IMG/VR virus record: IMGVR_UViG_3300031963_000006
Coordinates: 62,001 to 126,000 of that record
Length of the DNA: 64,000 bases
Reading direction: 5' to 3' (one strand)
The notes beneath the pieces were generated by a model. It was given only the letters and a program-made list of their open reading frames with translations, searched no databases and was not told the DNA's origin. The position numbers were made by a program, and so were the translations under genes. This document shows, piece by piece, positions 2,196 to 25,514 of this stretch; the first letter of the stretch is position 1; each line of letters starts with the position of its first letter.

Positions 2196-2201
2196 TTTAA
2201 T

Positions 2202-3146
2202 ATGAAATTAAGAATCCATAATCCAACTAATGAGATTACAAAAAAAAATCGTGATTATAATGTTTTTTGGGATGATTTAACTATTGAACTAAAAAAAAAT
2301 AACGAAGTTTATGAAAACAGATTTTTTGAGCAAGCTCATTTTGATAGATTTAATGTGAATTTTAAATCTTTATCAAAACAAGACGGATTATTAATGTTAG
2401 AATGCGAATATCTCATAGAAAATATTGAAACGGGTGATTTTTTAATTTTTTCAGTGGCAGATGATTTAACACACTGTATATTAGATGAGAGAAGTAACCC
2501 AAAACTAAAAAAAGTTTTTGTTTCTCAATTTATAGACTATAAAATAAAACATCACGTAGATGATTATTTTGAAAAATATTCTCCTTGGATTTATTTTCCT
2601 AGTTTTGATGTTGATTTAGAGCAATTTTACCAAAAAAGAAAGGAGAAAAACTCATTTGTTGATAAATTATTTTTTAGGGGGGCAACCGCACATAGACCAA
2701 TTATTAACCATTTTGATAGAAACATTTTAGAAGGATTAAATCCGATAAATACTAATGACTATTTTAATGAGCTAATAAATTACAGCATTGGTTTATCAAT
2801 TGCGGGGGTCGGAGAATTATGTTATAGGGATGTGGAATATATGGCATTAGGAATTCCATTTATACGGTTTGAGTTCCAGTCTCAATTAATTGAGCCATTA
2901 ATACCAGGACATCATTATATTTCAATACCGTATGATAATTCTATCCCAAAACATAACGAAGTTTTTACAGACAGATTAGGAGAATTTAATCACGCAAAAA
3001 TTATTGAGAGTAAATTTAAAGAAATAATTAACGATAAAGAATATTTAAAATTTGTTGGCGAAAACGCAAGAAAATATTATGAAAAGAATTTATCAAAAAA
3101 ATCAAGATTAGAAAACTCAATTAAATTAATAAATGAAATATTATGA
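2202..3146 (+). CDS. Putative GT-B glycosyltransferase (CgeB/GT90/exostosin-like C-terminal domain)
   Basis: KLFFRG, then YSIGLSIAGVGELCYRDVEYMALGIPFI, PLIPGHHYISI and VGENARKYY: the typical donor-binding C-terminal GT-B pattern. Confidence 0.6.
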   Translation: MKLRIHNPTNEITKKNRDYNVFWDDLTIELKKNNEVYENRFFEQAHFDRFNVNFKSLSKQDGLLMLECEYLIENIETGDFLIFSVADDLTHCILDERSNPKLKKVFVSQFIDYKIKHHVDDYFEKYSPWIYFPSFDVDLEQFYQKRKEKNSFVDKLFFRGATAHRPIINHFDRNILEGLNPINTNDYFNELINYSIGLSIAGVGELCYRDVEYMALGIPFIRFEFQSQLIEPLIPGHHYISIPYDNSIPKHNEVFTDRLGEFNHAKIIESKFKEIINDKEYLKFVGENARKYYEKNLSKKSRLENSIKLINEIL

Positions 3147-5395: not shown

Positions 5396-6281
5396 AATTA
5401 TTCTCCATTGCATTTCAGGATTCGGGGACCAATATGCAAATATTTTGACAGGATACAAAGCATGTAAAGATTTTACTAATTTCGGGTACGAAGTTGAAAT
5501 TTTATGGATAAATAAAAATTTATACTTTTCTCCAGATTTACCTTTAGATTATCTTTATGACTTTAGTCTTTTTAAAAAAATGAATATAAAAATAAATTAT
5601 ATACATAATGAGTCTGAGATTTCAGACGGTTTTTTATATTTAAACACCGGTCAAAACGCAATAAAAATATTTGTTGACAAAATAATCGATGAAATTAATG
5701 AATATGAATTACCTGTTTTTGACTATTTTGGTTTTCGCAGAAACTCTTACTCGTCTTTTTGTCCTGAAAAATTACCTGATTTTGATTATCAGTTTATAAA
5801 TGAAGAAGTACTTGAAATTGGAAATAAGTTTATAGAAAAAAAATCAAAAATTAAATCTGTTCATTTTAGATGTGACGATTTATTTATTCTTTCAGATTAT
5901 GATATTGTACTCGAAGATGTTTTTTATAACTCAATGATTAATAGGGTTTACGAATTTATTGAAATGAATAATAATCAGGATATAATGATTTGTTCTAACA
6001 ATAAAAGTTTAGTAAAACATATTACAAAAAATTTCAAAAATACATTTTATAATACATTTGATAGTGACTTAGATTTACATTATTCATATAATAAAAATTA
6101 TGAAGAAATGATTAATATTAATCACGCTAGACAAATTGTGGCAGAAATGACCTTATTTTCAAGATGTGATAATATTTTCACTGTTAGTAAAAGTCTATCA
6201 AACTTTTTAACATACGGTGTTGCTCATAATCATTATCATAAGGACTGGGATACTAAAATAAAAAATTTAATAACTAATTAA
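5385..6281 (+). CDS. Putative GDP-sugar-dependent GT-B transferase (NodZ/GT23/GT11 fucosyltransferase-like)
   Basis: SGFGDQ (GxG[N/D]Q), SVHFRCDD (HxRxxD) and AEMTLFSRCDNIF..S.S.F motifs. The likely start is the ATG at 5385 (MRAKII), not 5340. Confidence 0.6.
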   Translation: MRAKIILHCISGFGDQYANILTGYKACKDFTNFGYEVEILWINKNLYFSPDLPLDYLYDFSLFKKMNIKINYIHNESEISDGFLYLNTGQNAIKIFVDKIIDEINEYELPVFDYFGFRRNSYSSFCPEKLPDFDYQFINEEVLEIGNKFIEKKSKIKSVHFRCDDLFILSDYDIVLEDVFYNSMINRVYEFIEMNNNQDIMICSNNKSLVKHITKNFKNTFYNTFDSDLDLHYSYNKNYEEMININHARQIVAEMTLFSRCDNIFTVSKSLSNFLTYGVAHNHYHKDWDTKIKNLITN

Positions 6282-6289
6282 AAAATATT

Positions 6290-6889
6290 ATGGATTGTTT
6301 TTCACAAATTGGTCAAGATAAAATAGTTTTAAAATACTTAAAAAATAAACAAAATGGTTTTTTTGTAGATATTGGTTGCGGATATCCTAAAAATATTAAC
6401 AATACTTATTTATTAGAAAGTAAATATAACTGGAACGGAATATCTATCGATTTAAATGATTGTAAAGAGGATAATGGTGAAGGATGGGAAAGTATACGTA
6501 AAACTAAAAGAATTCTTTCTGATGCTCTAACAATAAATTATTCTGATTTATTTAAAAATAATAATTTACCATATAATGTTGATTATTTAAGCTTGGATTT
6601 AGAACCACCAGAATTAACGCTAGAATGTTTATATAAAATACCTTTTGACGAGTATAATTTCAACGTAATCTCATTTGAGATTGACACTGGTAGAGAAGGT
6701 GATTATTACAGAATCTCAAAAAGCCGCGAATTTTTACAGTCTAAAGGTTACACATTAATTGGTTCTTTGTGTGGAGGGCAGGATGACATATATCTACATA
6801 ATTCAATATCTCACTTAAAAAATGAATTTAAATTTGAGGACCCATCAATTGAATGGACAACTTGGCCCCAATCTACATTATATAAATAA
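6290..6889 (+). CDS. FkbM-family methyltransferase
   Basis: FSQIGQD..GFFVDIGCG...NNTYLLE...WNGISID and VDYLSLDLE...FNVISFE. Confidence 0.75.
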   Translation: MDCFSQIGQDKIVLKYLKNKQNGFFVDIGCGYPKNINNTYLLESKYNWNGISIDLNDCKEDNGEGWESIRKTKRILSDALTINYSDLFKNNNLPYNVDYLSLDLEPPELTLECLYKIPFDEYNFNVISFEIDTGREGDYYRISKSREFLQSKGYTLIGSLCGGQDDIYLHNSISHLKNEFKFEDPSIEWTTWPQSTLYK

Positions 6890-6907
6890 ACATTAAAAAT
6901 ATTAAAC

Positions 6908-9277
6908 ATGATTTTTCAAAATAAGATAACTAAAAAAAGTAATTTAGTAGATAACGATAGTTTGTCGGTTTATAATAATGAATGGGTTGCCCAACAAAAT
7001 CATAACGCATTCGAAATTTTCTTTTATTTCATAAAGGAGACCAGACCTAAAAGAATTTTAGAAATAGGAACTGCTCTAGGTGGATTTACTTATTTTTTAA
7101 AAGATACTTGTAATTCTCTAAATATAGATTGTGAAATAATGTCATTTGATATAAATGAAAATCATACATATGAAAAATTAAAAGAATTTGGAGTTGATGT
7201 GAGCGTTGAAAATATTTTTGACTCAAATTATACTACAGTTTCACAAAGTGTTATTGACTTTATTCAATCTGAAGGAACTACAATTGTATTGTGTGATGGT
7301 GGTAATAAAAAATTAGAATTTAATATTTTGTCAAATTATTTAAAAGAAAATGATTTTATATTAGGACATGACTATTCATACGATAAAGAATATTTTGATA
7401 ATAATATAAATCTTAAAATTTGGAATTGGTTAGAATTAACTGAAAAAGATATTGAGGAACCATGTAATAGAAATAATTTAGTTGATTACAGAAGAGATTT
7501 ATTCCAATCTGTTGTTTGGGTATGTAAAATGAAATCTGATGAAAAAATAAATGAACCTAAAGAAAATGAGAATATAGAAATTATGGAACCTGAGAACTTA
7601 AGTCACACAACTTTTGTAACAGGATTGTGGAACATTAAAAGAGATTCATTAACTGAAGGATGGTCTAGAAGTTTCGACCATTATTTGGAAAAATTTAATG
7701 AATTATTAAAAGTAAATGTTAACTTAATTATTTTTGGAGAAAAGGAATTAGAGTCTTTTGTTTGGGAAAGAAGAAGTAAATCAAACACGCAATTTATAGA
7801 AAGAAGTGTAGAATGGTTTAAGTCATCTGTACCGTATGAAAAAATTCAAGAGATTAGAAACAATCCTGAATGGTACGGTCAGTCAGGATGGCTTCCCGAC
7901 TCAACACAAGCGAAATTAGAATGGTATAATCCATTAGTCATGTCAAAAATGTTTTTACTACATGATGCAAAAATAATGGACCAATTTAATTCGGATGAAA
8001 TGTATTGGATTGATGCAGGATTATCAAACACGGTTCATCCAGGTTATTTTACTCACGATAAGGTACAAAATAAACTGAGTAAGTATTTTAATAAATTTAG
8101 TTTTGTTTGTTTCCCATACGAAGCGTCAAATGAAATTCATGGGTTTTCTTATCCTAAAATAAATGAATACGCCGGTTCAAATGTAAATTTGGTTGGTAGA
8201 GGAGGATTCTTCGGAGGACCTAAGGAAAGTATTTCTGAAATTAACTCAATCTATTATTCGATGTTGATTAATACCCTAACAGATGGATATATGGGCACTG
8301 AAGAATCAATATTTTCGATATTATTATACAAGTATTCTAATTTAATTAACTACTTTGAAATCGAAGATAATGGACTTATGGGTAAATTTTTTGAGGATTT
8401 GAAAAATGATACTTTAGAGGTCAAAACTAAACACACATTACCAAGTGGAGAACCTGTTAAAGATATTAGTAAGACATCACTATATGTGATTGGTTTTAAT
8501 AGTCCAAATCAACTAAAAACATTAATTCAATCTATGGTTGAATATGATGAGGATTTTATCAAAAAACCAAAGAAATATCTTTTGAATAACTCAACGGATA
8601 GAAGTACTGATTCGGGTTACGAAGAATTGTGTGCAATGTATGATTTTGAAATAATTAATCCTGGTGAAAACTTGGGTATATGTGGGGGTAGACAATTTGT
8701 TGCCGAACATTTTGATAAGACAGACTCAGAATTTTATTGGTGGTTTGAGGATGACATGTTTTTCTATCCAAAAAAAGGAGAAGTATGTAGAAATGGGTTT
8801 AATAGATACGTGAGTAATTTATACGATAAAAGTATGAGAATTGCTCAATCTGAGAATTTTGATTTTTTGAAGCTCAATTTTTCTGAGTTTTTTGGTGATA
8901 ATTCGGTGCAGTGGTCATGGTATAATACGCCGCAACATGTTAGAGAAGAGTTTTGGCCTCAAAATACTAAATTACCTCAAATGGGATTAGACCCAAATGC
9001 TCCGAGAACTGTCTTCAAAAATATTAAATCTTTAGATGGAGTTCCATATGCCGATGGAGAAATTTATTACTGCAACTGGCCACAAGTAATTTCTAAGAAA
9101 GGTAACCAAAAAATGTTTTTAGACACAAAGTGGGCACACCCATACGAACAGACTTGGATGTCGTTTATGTATCAGGAAACTAAAAAGGGTAACTTAAATG
9201 GTGGAATATTATTGATGACTCCTACTGAGCACAACCGTTTTGAACACTACGCGGCCGAACTTAGAAAAGAAAGTTAA
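6908..9277 (+). CDS. Three-domain protein: SAM methyltransferase + HtrL/YibB-like + GT2-like glycosyltransferase
   Basis: ILEIGTALGG..VLCDGG..ILGHDY; then SKMFLL..YWIDAGL..GGFFGG..GTEESIFS; then LLNNSTD..NLGICGGRQ..WWFEDDM. Confidence 0.65.
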   Translation: MIFQNKITKKSNLVDNDSLSVYNNEWVAQQNHNAFEIFFYFIKETRPKRILEIGTALGGFTYFLKDTCNSLNIDCEIMSFDINENHTYEKLKEFGVDVSVENIFDSNYTTVSQSVIDFIQSEGTTIVLCDGGNKKLEFNILSNYLKENDFILGHDYSYDKEYFDNNINLKIWNWLELTEKDIEEPCNRNNLVDYRRDLFQSVVWVCKMKSDEKINEPKENENIEIMEPENLSHTTFVTGLWNIKRDSLTEGWSRSFDHYLEKFNELLKVNVNLIIFGEKELESFVWERRSKSNTQFIERSVEWFKSSVPYEKIQEIRNNPEWYGQSGWLPDSTQAKLEWYNPLVMSKMFLLHDAKIMDQFNSDEMYWIDAGLSNTVHPGYFTHDKVQNKLSKYFNKFSFVCFPYEASNEIHGFSYPKINEYAGSNVNLVGRGGFFGGPKESISEINSIYYSMLINTLTDGYMGTEESIFSILLYKYSNLINYFEIEDNGLMGKFFEDLKNDTLEVKTKHTLPSGEPVKDISKTSLYVIGFNSPNQLKTLIQSMVEYDEDFIKKPKKYLLNNSTDRSTDSGYEELCAMYDFEIINPGENLGICGGRQFVAEHFDKTDSEFYWWFEDDMFFYPKKGEVCRNGFNRYVSNLYDKSMRIAQSENFDFLKLNFSEFFGDNSVQWSWYNTPQHVREEFWPQNTKLPQMGLDPNAPRTVFKNIKSLDGVPYADGEIYYCNWPQVISKKGNQKMFLDTKWAHPYEQTWMSFMYQETKKGNLNGGILLMTPTEHNRFEHYAAELRKES

Positions 9278-12224: not shown

Positions 12225-12243
12225 AAAATTAAAAAAAAATAAA

Positions 12244-12261
12244 AGATATTTATAAATAAAA
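12244..12261 (+). promoter_or_regulatory. Conserved upstream element AGATATTTATAAATAAAA (copy 1 of 3 identical); candidate late promoter
   Basis: The same 18-mer occurs at 12244, 30171 and 46213, each just upstream of a start codon. The core TATTTATAAATA is palindromic. Confidence 0.55.
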
Positions 12262-12266
12262 TTAAA

Positions 12267-15714: not shown

Positions 15715-15990
15715 ATGAGACCAAATAGAAGAAATACTCAAAATCAAAGCGAAGGTTTAATAATCTCTTTACCAACTGAGGTTGTTGTTAGAGAAATACC
15801 TGCAGTTCAAATTAAAACCTCAACAATTGAAGTTCTTTCTGTAGAAGACCTATCAAAACAAAGAAAAATTGTTGCCAATACAAAAGAACTTGGTCCAGTT
15901 ACCCTTTGGGAAAATCAAATGTATGATAGAATAGGTCAATGGACTGATGTTGACATTGAAACAAGATTAATTGAATTATTTTTAAAGTAA
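15715..15990 (+). CDS. Hypothetical protein (91 aa)
   Basis: A-rich leader and TAATG coupling to the downstream protease gene. Confidence 0.7.
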   Translation: MRPNRRNTQNQSEGLIISLPTEVVVREIPAVQIKTSTIEVLSVEDLSKQRKIVANTKELGPVTLWENQMYDRIGQWTDVDIETRLIELFLK

Positions 15991-16673
15991 TGGAAACAGA
16001 AAATACCGAAATAACTTATAAATTAGGGAGACAATATATTCCTGATGAGAGAGACCAAAACTATCTCATATCAACTCATTTGTTAAAAAGAACAAATAGA
16101 ACTAGAATTACCAGTCGTTATTGGGATGACACAATTTGGTGGGGAGACCAAGGCAATACACCTCAGTGTGTAGGATATGCATGGTCTCACTGGCTAAGTG
16201 ATGGTCCTGTATATCATAGAGGAATCGCTCCAAAAATACAACCAAACATTATTTATGAAAACGCTCAAAGATTGGATATTTGGCCCGGAGAAAACTATGA
16301 TGGAACCTCAGTAAGAGGAGGTGCAAAATTCCTACAAAATCAAAAATTAATCTCAAGGTATTATTGGGGGTTTAATTTAAAAACACTAATTGATTCTGTA
16401 TTAAATTTGGGACCAGTTGTTGTTGGTACTAATTGGTATTATGGTATGTTTTTTCCAAATTCTTCAGGGGTTATTAGAGCAACAGGACCATTAGCTGGAG
16501 GTCATGCTTATGTGATAAACGGAATTGCAACAACTTCACAAATGTTCAGAATTAAAAATAGTTGGGGTAAGGGATGGGGTCAAGGAGGTCATGCCTATAT
16601 AAGTTTCACAGATATGAATAGACTTATAATGGAACAAGGTGAAATTTGTTTGGCGACAGAGATAAGAACTTAA
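15990..16673 (+). CDS. Papain-like (C1A) cysteine peptidase
   Basis: DQGNTPQCVGYA (oxyanion Gln, catalytic Cys), GGHAYVING (His) and IKNSWGKGWG (Asn). Confidence 0.85.
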   Translation: METENTEITYKLGRQYIPDERDQNYLISTHLLKRTNRTRITSRYWDDTIWWGDQGNTPQCVGYAWSHWLSDGPVYHRGIAPKIQPNIIYENAQRLDIWPGENYDGTSVRGGAKFLQNQKLISRYYWGFNLKTLIDSVLNLGPVVVGTNWYYGMFFPNSSGVIRATGPLAGGHAYVINGIATTSQMFRIKNSWGKGWGQGGHAYISFTDMNRLIMEQGEICLATEIRT

Positions 16674-16754: not shown

Positions 16755-19562
16755 ATGACAAGTCAAGAAGAAATCAAAGCGTTTCTAGAAGGAAACGACC
16801 CTGAAGAGCACATCGTTGCCATAGAATTTGATTACGTTTCAGATTCTATATATAAAATCAAAGAAGTACCTGGTAAAGGTAAAGAAATCAAAAAAGACAC
16901 ATTCGTTGCATTTGCGTGGGTCGGAGACCTACGAGGTTTAAATTTTTATCAGTCATCAAAGGCATTACAGAAAGAAGCTATGTCTAAGTATGGAATTATG
17001 ATTGATAAACTTGAGACAGGCGGTAATGAACGAATGGAAGAAGGTTTAAAGTATATGGTTAAATCCTTAAAGGGTTATCGTTCTTTAATTCAATTCTTCC
17101 GTGATGGGGGTGTTGACCCTTGGGGTGAAAGAACAAAAGACCTAATTATGATTTTACCACCAACCGAACAATATCTTATATCGAGAGAAAAACGACTATT
17201 TAAAGGATACGACGAATACAATGATATTACGAGGTTTGTATTCGACTTAGAGACGACCGCACTCGAACCAAAAGACGGTCGTATCTTTATGATAGGTATC
17301 AAGACAAACAAAGGATACCAAAAAGTAATTGAGTGTTCTAATGAGGACGAGGAGAGACTAGGACTTGTAGAATTCTTCAACATCATAGATGAGTTAAAGC
17401 CTAGTATTTTGGGAGGTTACAATTCCGCGAACTTCGATTGGTATTGGATATTCGAACGTTGTAAGGCTCTGAACCTCGATATTAAAAGAATTTGTAAAAC
17501 ACTTAACCCAAAACATACAATAAAGGAAAGTGAGAACTTACTTAAACTCGCCAACGAAGTTGAAAGATACAATCAGGTTGGAATGTGGGGGTATAACGTA
17601 ATTGATATTATTCACTCAGTCCGTAGAGCACAAGCAATTAATTCAAGTATTAAGTCAGCGGGTTTGAAATATATCACTCAATATATTGACGCGGAATCCG
17701 AAGACCGAGTTTATATTGACCACACCGAGATTGGCCCGATGTATGCCAAAAAGGAAGAATATTGGTTAAACATTAAGAACGGAAAATACAAGAAAGCCAA
17801 CAATCCTGAATTTAATTATTTAGATACAAGATTTCCTGGCACATACATTAAGACAACAGGTGATGATATTGTAGAGAGGTATCTCGACGATGACTTGGAG
17901 GAAACCTTACTTGTTGACGAAGAATTTAACCAAGGAACATTCCTACTTGCATCCCTTGTACCAACGACCTATGAGAGGGTATCTACTATGGGTACGGCAA
18001 CACTTTGGAAAATGTTGATGCTTGCTTGGAGTTACAAACACAAACTTGCAATTCCAAAAAAACAATCAAAAACGGATTTTGTTGGCGGATTGTCACGACT
18101 ATTAAAGGTTGGTTACTCTACAAAAGTATTGAAGCTTGACTACTCGTCACTTTATCCTTCAATCCAACTTGTACACGATGTGTTTCCTGATTGTGACATT
18201 ACAGGCGCAATGAAGGGTATGTTATCTTACTTCCGTAATTCTCGTATCATGTATAAGAACTTGGCGGCAGAATGGTATGATAAAGATAAAAAGACATCTT
18301 TAAAGTATGACCGTAAACAACTTCCGATTAAGATTTTCATCAACTCAATGTTCGGAGCTTTGTCGGCCCCACAAGTATTTGCGTGGGGTGATATGTATAT
18401 GGGAGAACAGATTACTTGTACTGGTAGACAATACCTTCGTATGATGATTAAGTTCTTTATGAAAAAAGGTTATACCCCACTTGTAATGGATACTGACGGT
18501 GTTAACTTTTCAAAACCTGAAGGTGTGGAGGATAGAGTTTATATCGGTAAAGGTTTAAACTGGAAAGTTAAGGAGGGTAAAGAATATCGTGGGGACGACG
18601 CAGATGTTGCCGAGTTTAACGACACATTTATGAGAGGTGAGATGGCATTAGATACTGATGGAACTTGGCCATCGTGTATCAATCTTGCTCGTAAGAATTA
18701 CGCGGTTATGGATGCCAAGGGTAAGATTAAACTCACGGGTAATACAATTAAGTCAAAGAAACTTCCACTTTACATTGAGGACTTTTTGGACAAGGGTGTT
18801 AAACAATTACTAGAGGGTAAGGGTCAAGAATTTATCGAATGGTATTATGAGTATGTTCAAAAAATCTATAACAAACAAATCCCACTTATGAAGATTGCCC
18901 AAAGAGCGAAAGTTAAATTGTCTATTGATGATTATAGAAAACGCTCAAAGGAAAAAACAAAAGCGGGTAATGAAATGTCGAGAATGGCACATATGGAACT
19001 TGCAATTCGTGATAATGTGGCAGTCAATCTTGGTGATGTGATTTACTATGTTAATAACGGTATTAAGGCTTCACACGGAGATGTTCAGAAAGTTAATAAA
19101 CCTAAAAAGGGTTGGTCAGATGAAACAAAAGAACAACATCTAAAAGAATTTGGTAAACCATTAAATGACAGTATTAATTCAATCATACAATTAAACTGTT
19201 ATAGGATTGAGCCATCAGATTTGGAAAACAATCCTGAAATGACAGGTGATTATAATGTACCAAGAGCGATTGCAACATTTAACAAACGAATTGAACCACT
19301 ACTTGTGGTATTCAAACAGGAAGTTCGCGATGGTTTGATTGTTGATAATCCTGAGGAAAGAATGTTCTTTACGAAAGACCAATCAGAACTAATTAATGGT
19401 TTACCGTTTGAAAAAGGTGACCAAGATACTTTGGAAGAAGTTTTGACAATATCAGAACCTGAAATGAAGTATTGGGAAAAACGAGGATTACATCCTGATT
19501 ATATGTATGAATTGGCGGATAAAGGGTGGGAAGAAAAATTAATTCAGTTTGAGTCCGTCTGA
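16755..19562 (+). CDS. Family B DNA polymerase with 3'-5' exonuclease domain
   Basis: Exonuclease motifs FDLET, YNSANFD and YLDDD; polymerase motifs LDYSSLYPSI, KIFINSMFG and MDTDG. Confidence 0.95.
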   Translation: MTSQEEIKAFLEGNDPEEHIVAIEFDYVSDSIYKIKEVPGKGKEIKKDTFVAFAWVGDLRGLNFYQSSKALQKEAMSKYGIMIDKLETGGNERMEEGLKYMVKSLKGYRSLIQFFRDGGVDPWGERTKDLIMILPPTEQYLISREKRLFKGYDEYNDITRFVFDLETTALEPKDGRIFMIGIKTNKGYQKVIECSNEDEERLGLVEFFNIIDELKPSILGGYNSANFDWYWIFERCKALNLDIKRICKTLNPKHTIKESENLLKLANEVERYNQVGMWGYNVIDIIHSVRRAQAINSSIKSAGLKYITQYIDAESEDRVYIDHTEIGPMYAKKEEYWLNIKNGKYKKANNPEFNYLDTRFPGTYIKTTGDDIVERYLDDDLEETLLVDEEFNQGTFLLASLVPTTYERVSTMGTATLWKMLMLAWSYKHKLAIPKKQSKTDFVGGLSRLLKVGYSTKVLKLDYSSLYPSIQLVHDVFPDCDITGAMKGMLSYFRNSRIMYKNLAAEWYDKDKKTSLKYDRKQLPIKIFINSMFGALSAPQVFAWGDMYMGEQITCTGRQYLRMMIKFFMKKGYTPLVMDTDGVNFSKPEGVEDRVYIGKGLNWKVKEGKEYRGDDADVAEFNDTFMRGEMALDTDGTWPSCINLARKNYAVMDAKGKIKLTGNTIKSKKLPLYIEDFLDKGVKQLLEGKGQEFIEWYYEYVQKIYNKQIPLMKIAQRAKVKLSIDDYRKRSKEKTKAGNEMSRMAHMELAIRDNVAVNLGDVIYYVNNGIKASHGDVQKVNKPKKGWSDETKEQHLKEFGKPLNDSINSIIQLNCYRIEPSDLENNPEMTGDYNVPRAIATFNKRIEPLLVVFKQEVRDGLIVDNPEERMFFTKDQSELINGLPFEKGDQDTLEEVLTISEPEMKYWEKRGLHPDYMYELADKGWEEKLIQFESV

Positions 19563-19856
19563 AGATATAATGTACCAAATATTGTTTAGTTTCAATAGAT
19601 GAACACATGACCCTTTTTCTAATAAAATTTCATCATATTCTTCATCTATTTTATTTTCGGTACATGAAACAATCACAGGAGATAATGATTTAATTGTTAT
19701 TTCATTAGTTTTTTTATTATCTAAAACAACTTTATCCACTGTATTTTTAACCAAAATAAATTCTTCATCACTCGTCCAATATACAGGCTCCTCAACAATT
19801 TTTTTAATTGTGTAAACTTTTTGCCCCACTTGTTTTCGTAAAAATTTATTATCCAT
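19539..19856 (-). CDS. Hypothetical protein (105 aa)
   Basis: The likely start is the ATG at 19856, 1 nt after the upstream stop. Its 3' end overlaps the polymerase end convergently. Confidence 0.65.
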   Translation of the reverse strand: MDNKFLRKQVGQKVYTIKKIVEEPVYWTSDEEFILVKNTVDKVVLDNKKTNEITIKSLSPVIVSCTENKIDEEYDEILLEKGSCVHLLKLNNIWYIISSDGLKLN

Positions 19857-19857
19857 A

Positions 19858-20979
19858 TTAAATAACGTATATTTGTCTCGGCATTGCTGTAAATTTCTTT
19901 TGTTTGTTAAGATTTTCGGCAATCAATGCCTCTCTTTCCATTACTTTTTCAGGTTTCAATCTTGTCAAACGACCTTCAGCTCCGATTAATTCTTCAATTA
20001 ATTTTGATTTTTCATCTTTAGCCTCAGTGGCCAATGAAGCGTAGTCCATTGTTAATTCAGAATCAGGAGTTTTAATGTTACCACTAAACTTACCTCTTAC
20101 TCTTGATAAAGTTTCTTTTGCATATGCGAAAAACCACCTACGAACCCATATTTGAGATGGATTATTTAGGTCAATCCAATTTATTTTTTCAAAAGGTACA
20201 TCAGATGGTAACTTAATAATATCAGGATTGTCCTTTAAACATTTATCTCTATCGGCACCCTCAACATCATAATACCAATACCATACTTTTCCTCTCATTA
20301 GGGTGGCGTTACCGAAATCAAATTTACCTCCAGGTGTATTCATAAGATGTAACGCCTTTTTACCTTCAGGTAATGCGGTTACTCTATATGTTAAATCTCC
20401 AGCAATGATTCTTCTTTGAATGTTGATTTCTTGCATTCTTAATAACATGTCGAATGCTGGCATCATAAAGTATGACCCTGAATAACCCATCTGAGAATAA
20501 CCCGCGGGTCCACCTAATCCAACACCACCTAAGGCTCCAAATGACCAAGGGTCAAATAGTAAATTATTTAACTCGGCCGGAGTAAACCATAAAAGTTCAT
20601 TAAGTTCTCTATTAGCGGGAATTTCATAAATTTGTTGATTTGGTTGTAGTTGGACATAATCCTTCTTTAACACAGAATCACCTCCTGTCTGTAAACCAAC
20701 TATCTTAGAATAGGCATAGGTATATCTTTCTTCATAGTCTAAACTTTTTGTAATAAAAGCCTTTGACAAAGACTGAGTATCTAAATTAAGTCCATATAAC
20801 GAGGACCATTGTGACTCTATTAACCAATCTTGTACATATTGTGAATAATCATCAATAGATAATTCTAACAAAGAGTCTAATTGTTCGTCCTCAAGTTCCA
20901 CACTTCTAAGTGGGGCACCTAACAAGTGTCTTAATCTCTTATAGAGCTCACTTCTATATGGTTCTTCAATTATGGCCAT
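19858..20979 (-). CDS. Neck/head-completion protein (T4 gp13-like)
   Basis: N-terminal LGAPLRSVELEDEQLD...IDDY resembles the gp13 LGAP..(I/V)E...Q.D pattern; structural-gene context. Confidence 0.6.
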   Translation of the reverse strand: MAIIEEPYRSELYKRLRHLLGAPLRSVELEDEQLDSLLELSIDDYSQYVQDWLIESQWSSLYGLNLDTQSLSKAFITKSLDYEERYTYAYSKIVGLQTGGDSVLKKDYVQLQPNQQIYEIPANRELNELLWFTPAELNNLLFDPWSFGALGGVGLGGPAGYSQMGYSGSYFMMPAFDMLLRMQEINIQRRIIAGDLTYRVTALPEGKKALHLMNTPGGKFDFGNATLMRGKVWYWYYDVEGADRDKCLKDNPDIIKLPSDVPFEKINWIDLNNPSQIWVRRWFFAYAKETLSRVRGKFSGNIKTPDSELTMDYASLATEAKDEKSKLIEELIGAEGRLTRLKPEKVMEREALIAENLNKQKKFTAMPRQIYVI

Positions 20980-21016
20980 TGATTTGTTTATTATATAAAT
21001 ATTTACTTAAATAGAA

Positions 21017-21796
21017 TTATTTTTGACCAAAGTTTACAGGTCCTTTTATACTCTCTAAAATTTGGGTTTTTGTGGTCTTTACTGACTCATTAGTTTCCTT
21101 ATCAGTTTTCAACTTGTAAAGTTCATTTACAAATTGCCAATTTACTACATCCCAAAAATTTTTAATATACTCGTCTCTTTTACTTTGGTATTTTAGATAA
21201 TACGCATGTTCCCAAAGGTCCAAACCTAGCAAAGGATATCCACCATCAATAACATTCATAAGTGGATTATCTTGATTGGCGGTTGACATAATCTTTAATT
21301 TATTATTCTTGGTTAAGATTAACCAAACCCATCCCGAACCAAATCTATCTTTAGCAGTTTCCTCAAATTCTTGTTTGAACTCATTAACACTACCAAAATG
21401 TTTTTTAATTTTTTCTATAACTTCACCTTCGGCCTTTTGTTTTTTTGGTGACAACATTTTCCAAAACATTGCATGATTAAAAGCCCCACCGGCGTTATTT
21501 CTAATTTTGTTATTATATCTACTTATTGATTTTACAATTTCCTCGAGTTCAACATCACCATAATCTTTTTTTGACAAAGCGTCGTTTAATTTTTTGACAT
21601 ATGTTTTGTAGTGATTGTTATAATGAACATCCATTGTTTTAGAATCAATGAAATTTTTTAAAGAAGAATATGAATATGGTAATTTATCGATACCAATTCG
21701 TTTCATTTCAGTTATAAGAAAGTTTTGATTATCTTTCTTTTCTTGTAAAATAATTTCTTCCTTAAGTAATTCGGCTTTAGACTCTAAGTTTTTCAT
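21017..21796 (-). CDS. sod: Fe/Mn superoxide dismutase with N- and C-terminal extensions
   Basis: LPYSYSSL, HYNNHYKTYV, GGAFNHAMFW, FGSGWVWL, ANQDNP and DLWEHAYYL: all four metal ligands are present. GG..NH plus NQD suggests a Mn or cambialistic type. Confidence 0.93.
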   Translation of the reverse strand: MKNLESKAELLKEEIILQEKKDNQNFLITEMKRIGIDKLPYSYSSLKNFIDSKTMDVHYNNHYKTYVKKLNDALSKKDYGDVELEEIVKSISRYNNKIRNNAGGAFNHAMFWKMLSPKKQKAEGEVIEKIKKHFGSVNEFKQEFEETAKDRFGSGWVWLILTKNNKLKIMSTANQDNPLMNVIDGGYPLLGLDLWEHAYYLKYQSKRDEYIKNFWDVVNWQFVNELYKLKTDKETNESVKTTKTQILESIKGPVNFGQK

Positions 21797-21833
21797 CAAG
21801 ATATTTTATAGATATAAATATCTCATTTTAGAC

Positions 21834-23597
21834 TTATAAACGAGAGTTTATTCTATTCATCAATTCTTCTATAAAATCAGCCTTATCCAAATTATCCCCC
21901 ATAACAGTATCGATTATATTTTTCTTTTTGGATAACATGTCATAAATAACCCCTTCAATCGTGTTGTCAAAAATTGGATAATAAACGGATACTGAATTTT
22001 TTTGACCGTATCTATAAGCTCTATCTTCGGCTTGTTGATGATGAGCGGGAACGAAAGATAGGTCGTTGAATATAACCGCCTCGGCAGCGGTCAAGGTTAA
22101 ACCAACTCCTGCAGCCAACAAATTACCCACGAATACTTTAATCTTATCGTTCTCTTGAAATTGGTCAACGGCATGTTGTCTCATTGGTTTACTTGTTGAC
22201 CCATCTAAACGAACCGCTTGTTTACCAAAATGGTCGGCAATTTTATTTAATGTGTCAGTAAAGTTGGTAAAGACTATAACTTTTTTATCTTGGTCAATAA
22301 TATTTTGAATTAATTCTATGGTATCTGAGACTTTTTCATCGGCAATTGTTTGTCTTACTTTCATTAACTTGTTAAATTGAACAGTTAATGATGATGATTC
22401 GTCTTTTCTATTTTCATACCAATTGTAATAATCACCCATCAACTCCTCATAAACTTTTGACTTTAATCTGAGATATACAGGAGAAATAATTTTATCGGGT
22501 AAATCTAAAACTTCAGTTTTTAATCTCCTGAGAACCTGTCGAGAAGTCCTATCTCTTAATTCCTCCAAATTTGAAGCCCCTGTAACATTCCAAACTTTTC
22601 TATTTCCGGCCTTAAATTGATATCCTTGACAATATCTTATGGCGTAGGCCATCCAATTTTGAGCAACGGGACTATCAATTAAACTTAATAGGTTAAAATA
22701 ATTCATCGGACGAGATGTCATTGGAGTTCCCGTTAACAACCACAGTCTTTTTACATTTTTGGCAAAACTATTAATCAATTTGGTTCTTTGAGCTTGAACA
22801 TTTTGAACATAGTGAGCCTCATCTATTATAATTAAATCAAAATTTCCTTGGGTTATAGGTGAATTTTGTTTGTCTTTTAAATCATAAAAATTCTTTATGA
22901 TATCATAGTTAACAATCACAAAATCATGTTCTAATGAGAAGTTTTTTCCCTCCGCAATATAAACACTCCTATCAGTGTAGTTTTGAATCTCTCTCATCCA
23001 ATTAATTTTGAGAGATGCGGGACATATTATTAATACTTTTTGAATACCCGTCTCTAACGCGGCAATAATTGTTGCGGTGGTTTTACCCAATCCCATGTCG
23101 TCAGCCAAAATAAACCTTGTACTACCAACCAATTTTTCAATAGCAATTTTCTGATGTTCTAAAGCGGGTCTATGTTTATACTTTTCATAGTCAACTGTAA
23201 CATCTTTAATAACGTGCGTTTTAATTATGGCACCTTTGGGTAACCAAAAATCGTGAAGAGTTTCCCCCGAAAAAACTTTACCCCATACATGATATGATTT
23301 TTCTTTTTCAACTAATAGTTTCTCAATCCACAATTCAGTAGGTATTTCAGAATAAAGTTTTTCATCGGCAATTTTCTTAGCAAAATATGGGTCCAAATCA
23401 ACCCATTTTTTAGCCACTTTCGGAACAACGTCATGATAAGTTGTAATATATTCAGATTGGGCTCTTGTAGGGTAAAACTTTTTGTTTGATTCTTTTTGAG
23501 TTTTTAATCTTAAAATATAATTGTTAGCACCCGAATACGACTCTAAAATATTCAGAGCTCTATTTTCAATCATATTTTCTATTTGTCCTGTTTCCAA
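21834..23597 (-). CDS. SNF2/SWI2-family helicase-like ATPase (HARP/SMARCAL1-like)
   Basis: LADDMGLGKT, DEAH, LTGTP, AAGVGLTL and QAEDRAYRYGQ. The start is uncertain (TTG 23597 or ATG 23573); the track's 23654 start would overlap the divergent gene. Confidence 0.88.
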   Translation of the reverse strand: METGQIENMIENRALNILESYSGANNYILRLKTQKESNKKFYPTRAQSEYITTYHDVVPKVAKKWVDLDPYFAKKIADEKLYSEIPTELWIEKLLVEKEKSYHVWGKVFSGETLHDFWLPKGAIIKTHVIKDVTVDYEKYKHRPALEHQKIAIEKLVGSTRFILADDMGLGKTTATIIAALETGIQKVLIICPASLKINWMREIQNYTDRSVYIAEGKNFSLEHDFVIVNYDIIKNFYDLKDKQNSPITQGNFDLIIIDEAHYVQNVQAQRTKLINSFAKNVKRLWLLTGTPMTSRPMNYFNLLSLIDSPVAQNWMAYAIRYCQGYQFKAGNRKVWNVTGASNLEELRDRTSRQVLRRLKTEVLDLPDKIISPVYLRLKSKVYEELMGDYYNWYENRKDESSSLTVQFNKLMKVRQTIADEKVSDTIELIQNIIDQDKKVIVFTNFTDTLNKIADHFGKQAVRLDGSTSKPMRQHAVDQFQENDKIKVFVGNLLAAGVGLTLTAAEAVIFNDLSFVPAHHQQAEDRAYRYGQKNSVSVYYPIFDNTIEGVIYDMLSKKKNIIDTVMGDNLDKADFIEELMNRINSRL

Positions 23598-23645
23598 AAC
23601 AATCTTTAATGTTATAAAAATAGTAAAAATTAGATATTTATCAAT

Positions 23646-24161
23646 ATGGGACAACCAAGAGTACCGATTTCAAGAATAGGTAAATTTTTCGGAGCGGAGG
23701 ATTATGACCTTGATATATCAATGGGAGAGGAATGGTTACATGGTGATATGAATTTCACATTGGTTTTGTATAGTGTTGATAGATATAAGACTAAAACCGA
23801 TGATGTTTATGGAGAAACTCTAACTGACGGTATAAAGTTTAATCCACCAGTTGAATTTAAGGCATTTGTTCAAATAATGGCTCCTGAGAATAAAAATTTG
23901 GGAACTTCTAAAATAGAACAAACGGAACCTGGTAATATTAAAATTTCAGTATATCAAAAACATTTGGAGGAACTTGGGATTGATATAAACTTTGGTGATT
24001 ACATTGGATATTATGAAACTGAATCACGAGTTAGATACTATACGGTTAATAATGATGGTCGTGTTGTTTCAGATAACAAACACACATACGCTGGATATTT
24101 ACCTTTTTATAGAACAATAACCGCATCACCTGTGACGGATAACGAATTTAGAGGATTATGA
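23646..24161 (+). CDS. Putative head-closure/neck protein (gp14-like)
   Basis: Size, DDVYGE.....F..PVE pattern and position upstream of the tail terminator and sheath. Confidence 0.45.
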   Translation: MGQPRVPISRIGKFFGAEDYDLDISMGEEWLHGDMNFTLVLYSVDRYKTKTDDVYGETLTDGIKFNPPVEFKAFVQIMAPENKNLGTSKIEQTEPGNIKISVYQKHLEELGIDINFGDYIGYYETESRVRYYTVNNDGRVVSDNKHTYAGYLPFYRTITASPVTDNEFRGL

Positions 24162-24316
24162 AAATAAAAATAACTGAATTACAATTACAAAAATTAACCG
24201 AAATGGTTGATTCAGAAAAAGTGGTTTGTGATGAGTGTGGGTGGTCGTGGAAATTATCAGAAGGAGGAGACGACCTTTATATCTGTCATAAATGTGGACA
24301 TAACAATGAAGAATAA
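24158..24316 (+). CDS. Zinc-ribbon microprotein (52 aa), not in the ORF track
   Basis: MKIKITELQLQKLTEMVDSEKVVCDECGWSWKLSEGGDDLYICHKCGHNNEE*. ATGA overlap upstream and TAATG overlap downstream. Confidence 0.75.
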   Translation: MKIKITELQLQKLTEMVDSEKVVCDECGWSWKLSEGGDDLYICHKCGHNNEE

Positions 24317-25353
24317 TGCCATTACCTAAAAAAATTAAAAAACATATTCCTTTAACTCAACCTAAGACTTTATTAAGTAGGAGATATGAACTTGCTGAAA
24401 AAATTCAACAAGACGGGACATTTTTACCGAAGTCATTATTACATGCGGATTTGGATAAAGGATTTTTAGATTTTGTTAAAGATGAGTTAAAAACAATTGT
24501 TGATGGTAAAGTGGTCCCAATGGTTGACATTCTTATAACCACTCAAAATTGGGCTCAATTTACAGAAACTTGGAATTTCCAAAATTTAGATAAAAACGCG
24601 GAACCTCCATTCATTACAGTAGTCAGGGCACCTGAAGTTAAATTTGGAACGAATCCTGCGGTAATGTACAATATACCAAATAGAAAACAATATTTTTATG
24701 CTCAAGTTCCGACTTGGGACGGGAATAGACAAGGGTTCGATGTATATAAAATACCACAACCTGTTCCTGTAGATATAACTTATTCTGTGAAAATTATTTG
24801 TAATAGAATGAGAGAATTAAACTCATTCAATAAAAATGTCATAGAAAAATTTGCATCAAGACAGGCTTATCAGGTTATTAAAGGTCATTATATTCCAATT
24901 ATAATGGGTGAAATTTCTGATGAATCAGTTATGGAACTCGAGAAAAGAAAGTTTTATATACAAAATTATTCATTTACAATGTTAGGTTTTTTAATTGATG
25001 AGAATGAATTTGAGGTGTCACCCGCAATTTCAAGAGTTTTACAATTAACTGAAACTGAAAGAAAAGATGTTAGAAGGCAAAAGAAAAGAAATTCAAATCC
25101 TGATAGCACAACTATGAACATAGATTTTCCTGTGGATGTCGACATTTATACCAAAAAATTTGATTATTCAGTTAATGTCAATATTAGTAATCCTGTCAAT
25201 ATATCGTCATATTCGGTTTATATTAATGACAATTATTTTGGTGATGATGTTTTACAAATACAGATTAATAATGGGGACGTTTTAAAAATATCGGTAGTTA
25301 AATCAGATTACTATAGTCAAACATCTATGGTATTCAACAATCTTTTGGTTTAA
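24316..25353 (+). CDS. Putative tail terminator/sheath-stabilising protein (gp15-like)
   Basis: PVPVDITYSVKIIC pattern and position directly before the sheath gene. Confidence 0.45.
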   Translation: MPLPKKIKKHIPLTQPKTLLSRRYELAEKIQQDGTFLPKSLLHADLDKGFLDFVKDELKTIVDGKVVPMVDILITTQNWAQFTETWNFQNLDKNAEPPFITVVRAPEVKFGTNPAVMYNIPNRKQYFYAQVPTWDGNRQGFDVYKIPQPVPVDITYSVKIICNRMRELNSFNKNVIEKFASRQAYQVIKGHYIPIIMGEISDESVMELEKRKFYIQNYSFTMLGFLIDENEFEVSPAISRVLQLTETERKDVRRQKKRNSNPDSTTMNIDFPVDVDIYTKKFDYSVNVNISNPVNISSYSVYINDNYFGDDVLQIQINNGDVLKISVVKSDYYSQTSMVFNNLLV

Positions 25354-25514
25354 TCCTCACCGTAAATATCTTTTTTTTCTTTACAGGTTTCAATAATAAG
25401 TTTCTCTAAAAACCTATAAATCTTAACTCCTTTCTTGTCACAATAATCTTTTAATAGTTTGTGAACATCTTTTGAAATCTTTAAATTCTTTATTTCTCGA
25501 CCGTTCTGCAACAT
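25350..25514 (-). CDS. Ribbon-helix-helix transcription factor-like protein (54 aa), not in the ORF track
   Basis: MLQNGREIKNLKISKDVHKLLKDYCDKKGVKIYRFLEKLIIETCKEKKDIYGED*: KNLKIS strand, helix, G turn, helix. Confidence 0.7.
   Translation of the reverse strand: MLQNGREIKNLKISKDVHKLLKDYCDKKGVKIYRFLEKLIIETCKEKKDIYGED

What the first reader, a model, noticed from the sequence alone, without database searches (positions are those of the whole stretch)
21017..21796. Superoxide dismutase inside the neck-gene block with a possible cleavable leader: a candidate virion-packaged SOD
Seen: an intact Fe/Mn SOD core is preceded by ~30 extra residues ending ..ILQE..NFLITE|MKRIG and followed by a tail (..TNES..QILES..). 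It lies directly upstream of the gp13-like neck gene and carries the TATTTAT motif. Known: the T4 prohead protease cleaves after (I/L)-x-E in head-packaged proteins. Inference: SOD is expressed late, packaged and processed, protecting the virion or the newly infected cell from superoxide.
Basis: inference. Interest (0 to 1): 0.6.

Follow-up and report, generated by a model that had tools for sequence, protein, structure and literature searches.

The report
Phage superoxide dismutase with a leader
A giant freshwater phage carries an intact manganese-type superoxide dismutase whose extra head and tail pieces are conserved in all its relatives and look like protease-cut signals, so it may travel inside the virus particle, but that is not proven.

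Summary
Window 21017-21796 (minus strand) encodes a 259-aa Fe/Mn-family SOD, Mn-type by sequence, with all four metal ligands. It has 30 extra N-terminal residues and a 28-residue tail. It lies 37 nt upstream of the gp13-like neck gene, and ATATTTAT precedes it.

The genome is a complete 321-kb T4-like jumbo phage from lakes. It encodes a gp21-type prohead protease.

All 83 relatives examined keep the extension, and 81 of 82 loci show helicase-SOD-neck (the other ends after the SOD). In 70/70 distinct sequences it ends hydrophobic-(L/I)-x-E, followed by M or A at the canonical SOD start. Four of the family's five conserved (L/I)xE motifs lie in the extension or tail. The three cellular relatives found and the best solved SODs lack both.

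The window's protein is the short form of a modular family. Relatives fuse a zincin-like HExxH domain in front, or unknown domains of about 150-650 aa behind. The tail is a leftover linker.

This gives circumstantial support for processing and packaging, about 0.4. There is no proteomic or timing evidence. The TATTTAT motif is a general promoter-like element, not a late-gene marker. No other protein of this phage shares the leader. (L/I)xE is common by chance.

The parts
21017..21796 (-). SOD gene: 259 codons plus the TAA stop. Fe/Mn-family superoxide dismutase, Mn-type by sequence.
   Evidence: Pfam Sod_Fe_N and Sod_Fe_C. About 49% identical to S. aureus SodA. Metal ligands H58, H108, D193 and H197 are present.
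21707..21796 (-). N-terminal extension, residues 1-30. It is an amphipathic helix with hydrophobic residues spaced 3 and 4 apart. It holds a first conserved (L/I)xE ending at E13 (61/70) and a second ending at E30 (70/70).
   Evidence: Present in 83/83 relatives. pN is 0.37 against 0.13 for the core, with pS about 0.7. AlphaFold predicts a helix over residues 2-34, with pLDDT below 50 from residue 18 to 36.
21704..21715 (-). Junction I28-T29-E30 | M31. This is the candidate prohead-protease site, located exactly at the canonical SOD N-terminus.
   Evidence: P1 is Glu and P3 is L or I in 70/70 distinct sequences. In the 60 sequences tallied, P3 was L 40 and I 20, and P1' was M 55 and A 5. P2 varies (T, L, M, N, S, F, V).
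21104..21706 (-). SOD catalytic core, residues 31-231.
   Evidence: Aligns with residues 5-196 of PDB 5n56.
21020..21103 (-). C-terminal tail, residues 232-259. It is a vestige of the linker that joins the SOD to a C-terminal domain in longer relatives. It holds T-N-E237|S and I-L-E248|S.
   Evidence: (L/I)xE is found at these two columns in 51/59 and 46/59 of the sequences that have a tail. pLDDT is below 50. The MPTase-SOD forms end right after the core, without a tail.
21814..21821 (-). Promoter-like ATATTTAT, 25 nt before the SOD start, within an AT-rich inverted repeat.
   Evidence: The core TATTTAT is kept upstream of the SOD gene in 52 of 54 distinct upstream regions of relatives.
20995..21002 (-). 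The same promoter-like motif, 23 nt before the neck gene.
19858..20979 (-). gp13-like neck (head-tail adaptor) gene, immediately downstream of the SOD gene.
   Evidence: PHROG Ad2. (Pfam Phage_T4_gp13 on relatives). (present after the SOD in 81 of the 82 loci; the remaining locus ends after the SOD).
21834..23573 (-). SNF2-family helicase gene, immediately upstream of the SOD gene and in the same orientation.
19539..19856 (-). 105-aa ORF of unknown function, last gene of the conserved four-gene unit. It overlaps the 3' end of the convergent DNA polymerase gene by 24 nt.

Best explanation
Shown. This is an intact, very probably active Mn-type superoxide dismutase. It is encoded by a 321-kb T4-like jumbo phage of lakes and by a large clade of its uncultured relatives. 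The catalytic core (residues 31-231) is flanked by sequences specific to this clade. One is a 30-residue amphipathic N-terminal helix. The other is a 28-residue tail, which is the remnant of an inter-domain linker.

Inferred. The flanks are propeptide or linker segments cut by the phage's gp21-type prohead protease after hydrophobic-(L/I)-x-E. The cut sites would be E30|M31, with a possible extra site at E13, and E237 and E248 in the tail. That protease acts only inside proheads. The SOD would therefore be loaded into the head as cargo, the helix serving as the handle that binds the assembly core. It would then be trimmed to a canonical SOD and carried in the virion, and possibly ejected with the DNA. 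There it could remove superoxide in the particle or at the start of infection.

In relatives the same sites separate the SOD from a fused zincin-like domain and from C-terminal domains. The family thus behaves like a small cleavable multi-domain cargo protein.
For: 1. The extension is present in 83/83 relatives, including two with GTG starts. It is constrained: pN 0.37 against pS about 0.7.
2. It is absent from the closest cellular SODs found (44-45% identical; they start 4-5 residues before LPxLPY). It is also absent from the best-matching solved SODs shown.
3. (L/I)xE ends at E30 in 70/70 distinct sequences, with P2 free to vary and P1' being M or A. Only five (L/I)xE columns are conserved in the family. 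Four lie in the roughly 60 flanking residues. The fifth is the LWEH motif next to the metal ligands D193 and H197, so it is presumably constrained by catalysis.
4. The zincin-like domain fused in relatives ends in an invariant hydrophobic-(Y/F)-E. The stand-alone copy in this genome stops exactly at that Glu.
5. The genome has a T4-type head module: a Peptidase_S77 protease (E 9e-25), a gp20 portal, an acidic scaffold-like protein and a gp23 capsid protein. The capsid protein's first 60 residues hold five (L/I)xE motifs. One is at residue 44, where the T4 maturation site maps by extrapolation.
6. The junction and the tail are the low-confidence parts of the model.
7. T4 precedent (PMC9026906): N-terminal capsid targeting sequences are removed by gp21, Alt is trimmed at both ends, and propeptides carry redundant sites.
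8. Fusion partners of the zincin kind are typical of phage proteins predicted to be packaged (PMC5512222).
9. The promoter-like motif has the spacing (20-31 nt) and flanking base seen before the terminase, protease, scaffold and neck genes.
10. A virion-packaged SOD is known in chlorovirus PBCV-1 (PMC7019647).
Against: - There is no direct evidence of cleavage, packaging or timing.
- (L/I)xE is short and common: 1.25 per 100 aa in this proteome, and 31% of ORFs have one in their first 20 residues. Head-module ORFs are not significantly enriched: 7/13, p 0.07.
- No other ORF of the genome matches a profile of the leader (best E 0.4). T4's internal proteins, in contrast, share their targeting sequence.
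- The leader does not resemble the T4 sequence beyond MK, its amphipathic character and a terminal (L/I)xE.
- In fused relatives the helix is internal, not N-terminal. Those genes carry the 12-nt-spaced promoter form behind a terminator, as the arrays of small genes do.
- AlphaFold draws one continuous helix through the junction, at low confidence.
- The gene lies beside the helicase and polymerase genes, outside the head module.
- A test of binding between the leader and the scaffold-like protein gave no answer.
Confidence: 0.4

Rival explanations
1. The extension is a permanent part of a cytoplasmic enzyme. It would be an amphipathic helix that pairs SOD dimers or docks the SOD onto a partner, for example the fused or neighbouring proteins. 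The SOD would be an ordinary auxiliary gene that detoxifies superoxide in the infected cell. The conserved L/I and Glu at the junction would be structural.
For: - Hydrophobic residues are spaced 3 and 4 apart over residues 4-18, and AlphaFold predicts a continuous helix 2-34.
- No other protein shares the leader.
- The helix is internal in fused forms, and those genes have the promoter form of the small-gene arrays.
- The motif is common by chance.
- SOD genes annotated in other phages, such as the PA5oct group and a Vibrio phage, align with this one only from about residue 30 onward, so no such leader is seen there.
Against: - Invariance of P3 and P1 with a free P2, exactly at the canonical N-terminus, in 70/70 sequences that are otherwise only 60-70% identical.
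- The same motif marks every other domain boundary of the family.
- pLDDT is low at the junction.
- The three cellular relatives found and the best solved SODs shown work without such a helix.
Confidence: 0.33
2. The flanks are cleaved in the cytoplasm by the phage's own small zincin-like metallopeptidase. That enzyme is stand-alone here (genome 247616-248005) and fused in front of the SOD in relatives. The arrangement would resemble the self-processing proposed for polyvalent proteins. The prohead protease would play no part.
For: - In 27 of the 83 sequences examined, the 129-aa HExxH domain is fused directly upstream of the helix.
- Its model is confident (pLDDT 91). [quoted passage not shown] Its best structural matches are Wss1, thermolysin-type and M1 zincins.
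- The language-model search points to an IrrE/M78-like family.
- Zincin domains are proposed processors of multi-domain phage proteins.
Against: - The structural matches are weak (best E 0.012), and no peptidase activity is known.
- A strict Glu at P1 fits the gp21 family, not what I know of zincins, which select mainly at P1' (my knowledge).
- Most family members, the commonest 512-aa form included, have no fused zincin.
Confidence: 0.1
3. M31 is used as an internal start, alone or beside M1. A canonical SOD would be made without any proteolysis, and the extension would be a relic or a second isoform.
For: - M31 sits exactly where cellular SODs begin.
- It is Met in 55 of the 60 sequences tallied.
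Against: - The upstream 30 codons are in frame and conserved in 83/83 relatives, with an amphipathic pattern and pN below pS.
- One subclade has Ala at this position.
- In fused forms the frame runs through from the zincin domain.
- The promoter-like motif lies upstream of M1, not of M31.
- A metatranscriptome contig with no mismatches runs 21 nt upstream of the M31 codon. DNA carry-over is not excluded.
Confidence: 0.08

Closest known systems
Bacterial Mn superoxide dismutases, e.g. Staphylococcus aureus SodA (PDB 5n56) and E. coli SodA
   Same: Same two-domain fold family. About 49% identical over residues 36-228. All four metal ligands and the Mn-type positions are present: GGAFNH rather than a Gln in the first domain, and Gln175 in NQDNP.
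   Different: Cellular and solved SODs begin 4-5 residues before LPxLPY and end soon after the last helix. This one has 30 extra N-terminal and 28 extra C-terminal residues. It belongs to a viral clade no closer than about 45-49% to any cellular sequence found.
Phage T4 head-internal proteins with capsid targeting sequences (IPI-III) and Alt
   Same: A short N-terminal amphipathic leader starting MK and ending (L/I)-x-E. A gp21-type protease is encoded in the same genome. Trimming at both ends, as in Alt, and redundant sites in propeptides have precedent.
   Different: The leader is 30 residues, not 10. It has no sequence similarity to MKTYQEFIAE beyond these general features. It is not shared with other proteins of this phage. 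Cleavage and packaging are untested.
Polyvalent proteins of phages and conjugative elements (Iyer et al. 2017, PMC5512222)
   Same: In relatives the SOD is one module of a multi-domain protein with a zincin-like HExxH domain. It lies beside an SNF2 ATPase gene and virion genes.
   Different: The window's protein has a single domain. The word 'superoxide' does not occur in that paper. The architectures here have 2-3 domains, not up to 15.
Virion-packaged Cu/Zn SODs of large eukaryotic viruses (chlorovirus PBCV-1 A245R; vaccinia A45R, a SOD-like virion component; Megavirus SOD)
   Same: A viral SOD that is made late and packaged, and is thought to act on superoxide early in infection.
   Different: They belong to an unrelated fold family (Cu/Zn, not Fe/Mn) and to eukaryotic viruses. 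I know of no propeptide or protease-site logic in them.
Fe/Mn SOD genes annotated in other phages (Pseudomonas phage PA5oct group, Vibrio phage 2.275.O, a freshwater 'Bacteriophage sp.')
   Same: A phage-borne Fe/Mn SOD.
   Different: Only 27-37% identical. The alignments start near residue 30-42 of this protein, so they give no sign of the leader. I did not look at their termini.

Membership tests
Fe/Mn superoxide dismutase (Pfam PF00081 + PF02777) | Both the alpha-hairpin N-domain and the alpha/beta C-domain are present | tested here: met
   Sod_Fe_N E 1.5e-21 and Sod_Fe_C E 1.5e-40, both far above the curated cut-offs.
Fe/Mn superoxide dismutase (Pfam PF00081 + PF02777) | Four metal ligands (His, His, Asp, His) and the second-shell His/Tyr/Gln | tested here: met
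   H58, H108, D193, H197, H62, Y66 and Q175 are present. They are invariant in 37 family members. The assignment of roles rests on alignment to S. aureus SodA and on my knowledge of the family.
Fe/Mn superoxide dismutase (Pfam PF00081 + PF02777) | Dismutase activity and metal specificity | not testable with these tools
   Needs an enzyme assay. The Mn-type call is from sequence signatures only.
T4-type prohead-protease substrates (capsid-targeted, processed head proteins) | A gp21-family (Peptidase_S77) prohead protease in the same genome | tested here: met
   genome 300317-301042, Pfam E 9e-25, PHROG head maturation protease E 3e-44, next to portal, scaffold-like and gp23 genes.
T4-type prohead-protease substrates (capsid-targeted, processed head proteins) | An (L/I)-x-E site at the boundary between propeptide and mature protein | tested here: met
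   70/70 at E30. The motif alone is weak evidence.
T4-type prohead-protease substrates (capsid-targeted, processed head proteins) | A targeting leader similar to the T4 CTS, or shared among several cargo proteins of the phage | tested here: not met
   a profile of the leader finds no other ORF in the genome (best E 0.4). The resemblance to MKTYQEFIAE is only general.
T4-type prohead-protease substrates (capsid-targeted, processed head proteins) | Presence in the virion with a processed N-terminus | not testable with these tools
   No cultured relative or virion proteome exists.
T4-type prohead-protease substrates (capsid-targeted, processed head proteins) | Late expression | tested here: inconclusive
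   The promoter-like motif has the spacing seen before head genes. The motif is general, and fused relatives use the other spacing. RNA-library contigs lie on the SOD and neck genes but not on the helicase gene; they give neither timing nor proof of transcription.
Polyvalent proteins (Iyer et al. 2017) | Two or more unrelated effector domains in one polypeptide | tested here: not met
   The window's protein has the SOD domain only. Relatives of 360-878 aa do meet this feature.
Polyvalent proteins (Iyer et al. 2017) | A zincin-like metallopeptidase domain in the same protein | tested here: not met
   In this genome the domain is a separate gene 165 kb away. It is fused in 27 of the 83 relatives examined.

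The most novel reading that the evidence does not exclude
A clade of lake jumbo phages loads a manganese SOD into its heads as part of a small, cleavable multi-domain cargo protein: zincin-like domain, SOD, nuclease-like domain. The modules are separated by prohead-protease sites and shuffled between relatives. This would be the first SOD known to be carried in a bacteriophage particle. It would also be a new effector type among injected phage proteins. It would quench superoxide in the sunlit virion or during the first minutes of infection.
Probability: 0.3. Interest if true: 0.75.

Novelty: new variant of a known kind. Interest (0 to 1): 0.5.

Why it matters
Phage-borne SOD genes are usually filed as metabolic helpers that work in the infected cell. 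Here the sequence itself carries a testable prediction. A clade-wide leader and linkers end in the motif cut by the phage's own head protease. If that prediction holds, an antioxidant enzyme is a virion component of abundant lake phages, as it is in chloroviruses. That would bear on how phage particles survive photo-oxidative stress, or how infection copes with an early oxidative response. The family would also give a natural set of head-targeting leaders and cleavable linkers outside the T4 model. If the prediction fails, the family still shows a new N-terminal helix on a very well-known enzyme, and a hot spot of domain fusion at a fixed place in the genome.

Tried and rejected
- Near-identical DNA in the phage collection: none. 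No cultured relative: capsid protein at most about 42% identical, neck protein 24%.
- A profile of the leader against all 362 ORFs of the genome: only the SOD itself. The leader is therefore not a shared targeting sequence detectable by sequence.
- Enrichment of (L/I)xE near the N-termini of head-module proteins: 7/13 against 31% genome-wide, p 0.07. This is not significant, so the motif alone proves nothing.
- The C-terminal domains of relatives against this genome: no match. Against Pfam, PHROGs and PDB sequences: no match. There is only a weak language-model lead to PD-(D/E)xK nucleases.
- T4 late-promoter reading. The motif is the reverse complement of TATAAATA, and a single-sequence search with T4 gp55 found nothing. 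The tool itself says an empty answer shows nothing. I therefore do not equate the motif with a late promoter.
- The standard sigma-70 and terminator scan of 19300-24300: counts no different from shuffles, and no terminator between the helicase, SOD and neck genes.
- Complex prediction of the scaffold-like protein with SOD residues 1-60: no answer. This is not evidence either way.
- 'True start at M31 only': rejected. The evidence is the in-frame conservation, the GTG-start variants, the subclade with Ala at that position, and the fused forms.
- Signal peptide or membrane anchor: rejected on sight. The leader has 5 basic and 7 acidic residues and no hydrophobic stretch.
- pN/pS is only a rough guide, because synonymous sites are saturated.

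Full report
**What is there**

Window 21017-21796 on the minus strand is an open frame of 259 codons from ATG 21796. An in-frame TTG lies one codon upstream, but homologues begin MK(N/K)LE, so the ATG is the start. Pfam finds both halves of an Fe/Mn superoxide dismutase, at E 1.5e-21 and 1.5e-40.

The closest solved structure is S. aureus SodA, 5n56. Its residues 5-196 align with residues 36-228 here. A canonical SOD would therefore begin at M31 and end near residue 231.

- The metal ligands H58, H108, D193 and H197 are present and invariant in the family. So are the second-shell residues H62, Y66 and Q175.
- The GGAFNH and NQDNP signatures mark it as Mn-type. That assignment rests on my knowledge of the family.

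All numbering below is from the ATG.

**The genome**

The window lies in a complete 321,403-bp virus record with direct terminal repeats and 32.7% G+C. It has a T4-type head module at 295-305 kb: large terminase, gp20 portal, a Peptidase_S77 (gp21) prohead protease, an acidic 497-aa scaffold-like protein and a gp23 capsid protein. It also has a 1195-aa tail sheath and other tail genes inside the window.

The nearest capsid proteins in the phage collection are about 41-42% identical: an uncultured 484-kb phage, Microcystis phage Mel-JY01 and Flavobacterium phage immuto. No cultured relative exists. The DNA occurs in lake and freshwater metagenomes of 17 studies.

**Context**

The SOD is the second gene of a minus-strand unit: SNF2 helicase (21834-23573), SOD, gp13-like neck protein (19858-20979), then a 105-aa ORF. 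The unit lies between the DNA polymerase gene and the divergent tail cluster.

In 82 related loci the order helicase, SOD, neck is kept in 81. The remaining locus shows only the helicase and the SOD. The small ORF follows in 74. The scan matched 599 stretches in the viral collection, of which 585 encode a relative.

**The extension is real and specific to this clade**

- All 83 family sequences examined carry it. Two at first seemed to start at M31, but they have the extension in frame behind a GTG.
- It is more variable than the core but constrained: pN 0.37 against 0.13, with pS about 0.7 and saturated.
- Its hydrophobic residues are spaced 3 and 4 apart over residues 4-18, the pattern of an amphipathic helix.
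- AlphaFold predicts a helix over residues 2-34, but with pLDDT below 50 for residues 18-36. The tail (234-259) also scores below 50.
- The nearest cellular SODs found come from a gammaproteobacterial genome and two Babeliales genomes and are 44-45% identical. They start 4-5 residues before LPxLPY and have neither extension nor tail. The best solved SODs shown also start there.

The host is unknown.

**The junction**

In 70 distinct sequences that are only 60-70% identical overall, the extension always ends hydrophobic-(L/I)-x-E. P2 is free: T, L, M, N, S, F or V. The next residue is M or A. In the 60 sequences tallied, it was M 55 times and A 5 times.

Scanning the whole family alignment finds only five columns where (L/I)xE is kept in at least 60% of sequences:

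| Column | Kept in | Location |
|---|---|---|
| E13 | 61/70 | extension |
| E30 | 70/70 | extension, at the junction |
| E196 | 57/70 | LWEH, next to metal ligands D193 and H197 in the core |
| E237 | 51/59 | tail |
| E248 | 46/59 | tail |

Four of the five conserved motifs therefore sit in about 60 flanking residues. The fifth is presumably fixed by catalysis.

**The window's protein is the short form of a modular family**

Relatives come in several sizes:

- 248-259 aa, as here.
- 373 aa, and 501-513 aa. The latter is the commonest form and adds a C-terminal domain of about 288 aa.
- 555 aa.
- 360-364 aa, with a 130-aa HExxH domain in front of the helix.
- 693-711 aa, with both additions.
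- 878 aa.

The tail of the window's protein aligns with the linker that precedes these C-terminal domains. It is therefore a vestige. The forms that never had a C-domain stop right after the core.

The HExxH domain exists in this genome as a separate 129-aa gene at 247616-248005, 51-57% identical to the two fused copies tested. Its model is confident, with pLDDT 91. [quoted passage not shown] This is the layout given for zincin-like peptidase domains of polyvalent proteins.

Its best structural matches are Wss1 and thermolysin-type or M1 zincins, but they are weak: E 0.012, probability 0.98. The fused copies end in an invariant hydrophobic-(Y/F)-E. The stand-alone copy stops exactly at that Glu. 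Every domain boundary in the family therefore carries a Glu preceded by a hydrophobic residue two places before.

The C-terminal domains match nothing in Pfam, PHROGs, PDB sequences or this genome. A D...D...QxKP pattern and a weak language-model lead hint at a PD-(D/E)xK nuclease. That is a lead only.

**Does the protease fit?**

T4 gp21 cuts after Glu in a short motif. In the 10-residue capsid targeting sequence of IPIII, residues 8 and 10 govern processing. Alt is trimmed at both ends, and propeptides of related giant phages hold redundant sites (PMC9026906). That the T4 motif is (L/I)-x-E is my own knowledge.

This phage's capsid protein has five (L/I)xE motifs in its first 60 residues, conserved in two relatives. 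Extrapolating from the block that aligns with T4 gp23 (521-aa precursor, 456-aa mature chain) places the T4 maturation point near LKE44|N. INE60|A is another candidate. A gp21-like specificity is therefore plausible here, though not shown.

**What weakens the packaging idea**

- (L/I)xE is frequent: 1.25 per 100 residues. It occurs within the first 20 residues of 31% of all ORFs, and head-module ORFs are not significantly richer.
- No other ORF shares the leader.
- In fused relatives the helix is internal.
- The complex test of leader against scaffold gave no answer.
- There is no proteome.

**Timing**

ATATTTAT is a real promoter-like signal. 78 of its 125 genomic occurrences lie within 60 nt upstream of an ORF in that ORF's orientation. 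The core TATTTAT is kept before the SOD gene in 52 of 54 distinct upstream regions of relatives. However, it precedes genes of all kinds.

Two forms can be told apart:

- (A/G)ATATTTATA at 20-31 nt from the start. This form precedes the terminase, protease, scaffold, neck and SOD genes.
- TATATTTAT at 12-17 nt, often behind a GC-rich terminator. This form precedes the arrays of small genes at 195-220 kb and the stand-alone zincin gene.

The split is not clean, because both forms also occur before genes inside the tail cluster. The zincin-SOD fusions of relatives use the second form.

The motif is the reverse complement of the T4 late consensus, not the consensus itself, and I found no gp55 homologue. 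'Expressed late' therefore remains open.

One lake metatranscriptome holds exact contigs on the neck gene and on SOD codons 24-85, and none on the helicase gene. These are contigs, and DNA carry-over is possible, so this is weak.

**Verdict**

The flanks are propeptide or linker segments cut by the prohead protease, which would imply head packaging.

- The main rival, at about 0.33, is an uncleaved docking or pairing helix on a cytoplasmic enzyme.
- Processing by the zincin-like protein is at about 0.1.
- Internal initiation at M31 is at about 0.08.

A packaged SOD has precedent in chlorovirus PBCV-1 and in poxvirus and Megavirus Cu/Zn SODs. My paper searches turned up no bacteriophage case, and the polyvalent-protein survey does not mention one.

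Noticed in passing
genome C1:247616-248005 (outside the window; L088:2616-3002): A stand-alone 129-aa HExxH protein. Its model is confident (pLDDT 91) and of the zincin type. Its best structural matches are Wss1 and thermolysin-type or M1 peptidases, and there is an IrrE/M78-like language-model lead. The same domain is fused in front of the SOD in 27 of the 83 relatives examined. The stand-alone copy ends at the invariant Glu that marks the domain's end in the fusions.
   Followed up: partly
window 21797-21840, minus strand: The promoter-like TATTTAT before the SOD gene lies in an AT-rich inverted repeat (RNA fold about -6.5 kcal/mol against -2.9 for shuffles in the near-identical relative L008). 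Some relatives keep the hairpin through compensatory changes (GAGATATTT.. against GGCTTATTT..). Others lack it. It could be an operator or a 5' hairpin.
   Followed up: partly
whole genome; e.g. window 12242-12266, and genome 74375-74398: The promoter-like motif comes in two spacing classes: 12-17 nt and 20-31 nt from the start codon. In several genes it extends to the palindrome TATTTATAAATA, which contains the T4 late consensus TATAAATA. The core also resembles the Bacteroidota -7 element TAnnTTTG (my knowledge), which hints at the host phylum.
   Followed up: partly
relatives, e.g. L018:4709-5539, L059:4715-5713, L060:4679-6616: The SOD locus is a hot spot of domain fusion. At least three unrelated C-terminal domain types, of about 150-650 aa, follow the SOD in relatives. 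None is present in this genome, and none matches Pfam, PHROGs or PDB sequences. The commonest has invariant D192, G196, D198, Q211, K213 and P214, and a weak PD-(D/E)xK lead.
   Followed up: partly
window 15990-16673 (+): A 227-aa ORF with a papain-family (Peptidase_C1) match at E 1.7e-06, directly upstream of the DNA polymerase gene.
   Followed up: no
window 945-9277 (+): A run of six ORFs. Three have sugar- or methyl-transferase matches: GlcNAc transferase at E 9e-66; HtrL_YibB plus FtsJ-like; a weak CmcI-like match. Three have no Pfam match. A similar cluster lies beyond the polymerase gene in relatives.
   Followed up: no
window 24158-24316 (+) and 25350-25514 (-): A 52-aa ORF with two CxxC pairs (zinc-ribbon-like) lies inside the tail cluster. 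A 54-aa ORF lies on the opposite strand; its relatives have a weak RepB-RCR_reg match.
   Followed up: no
window 19539-19562: The 105-aa ORF that ends the helicase-SOD-neck unit overlaps the 3' end of the convergent DNA polymerase gene by 24 nt.
   Followed up: no
window 19516-19785, 19979-20131, 21542-21727: A lake metatranscriptome library holds contigs with no mismatches at these places (polymerase end and small ORF, neck gene, SOD codons 24-85). It holds none on the helicase gene. DNA carry-over is not excluded.
   Followed up: partly
genome C1:301394-302887 and C1:122-571 (outside the window): The 497-aa scaffold-like protein between the protease and the capsid gene has a long run of Asp, Glu and Met. 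The first ORF of the record is an almost pure Thr/Pro/Lys repeat.
   Followed up: no
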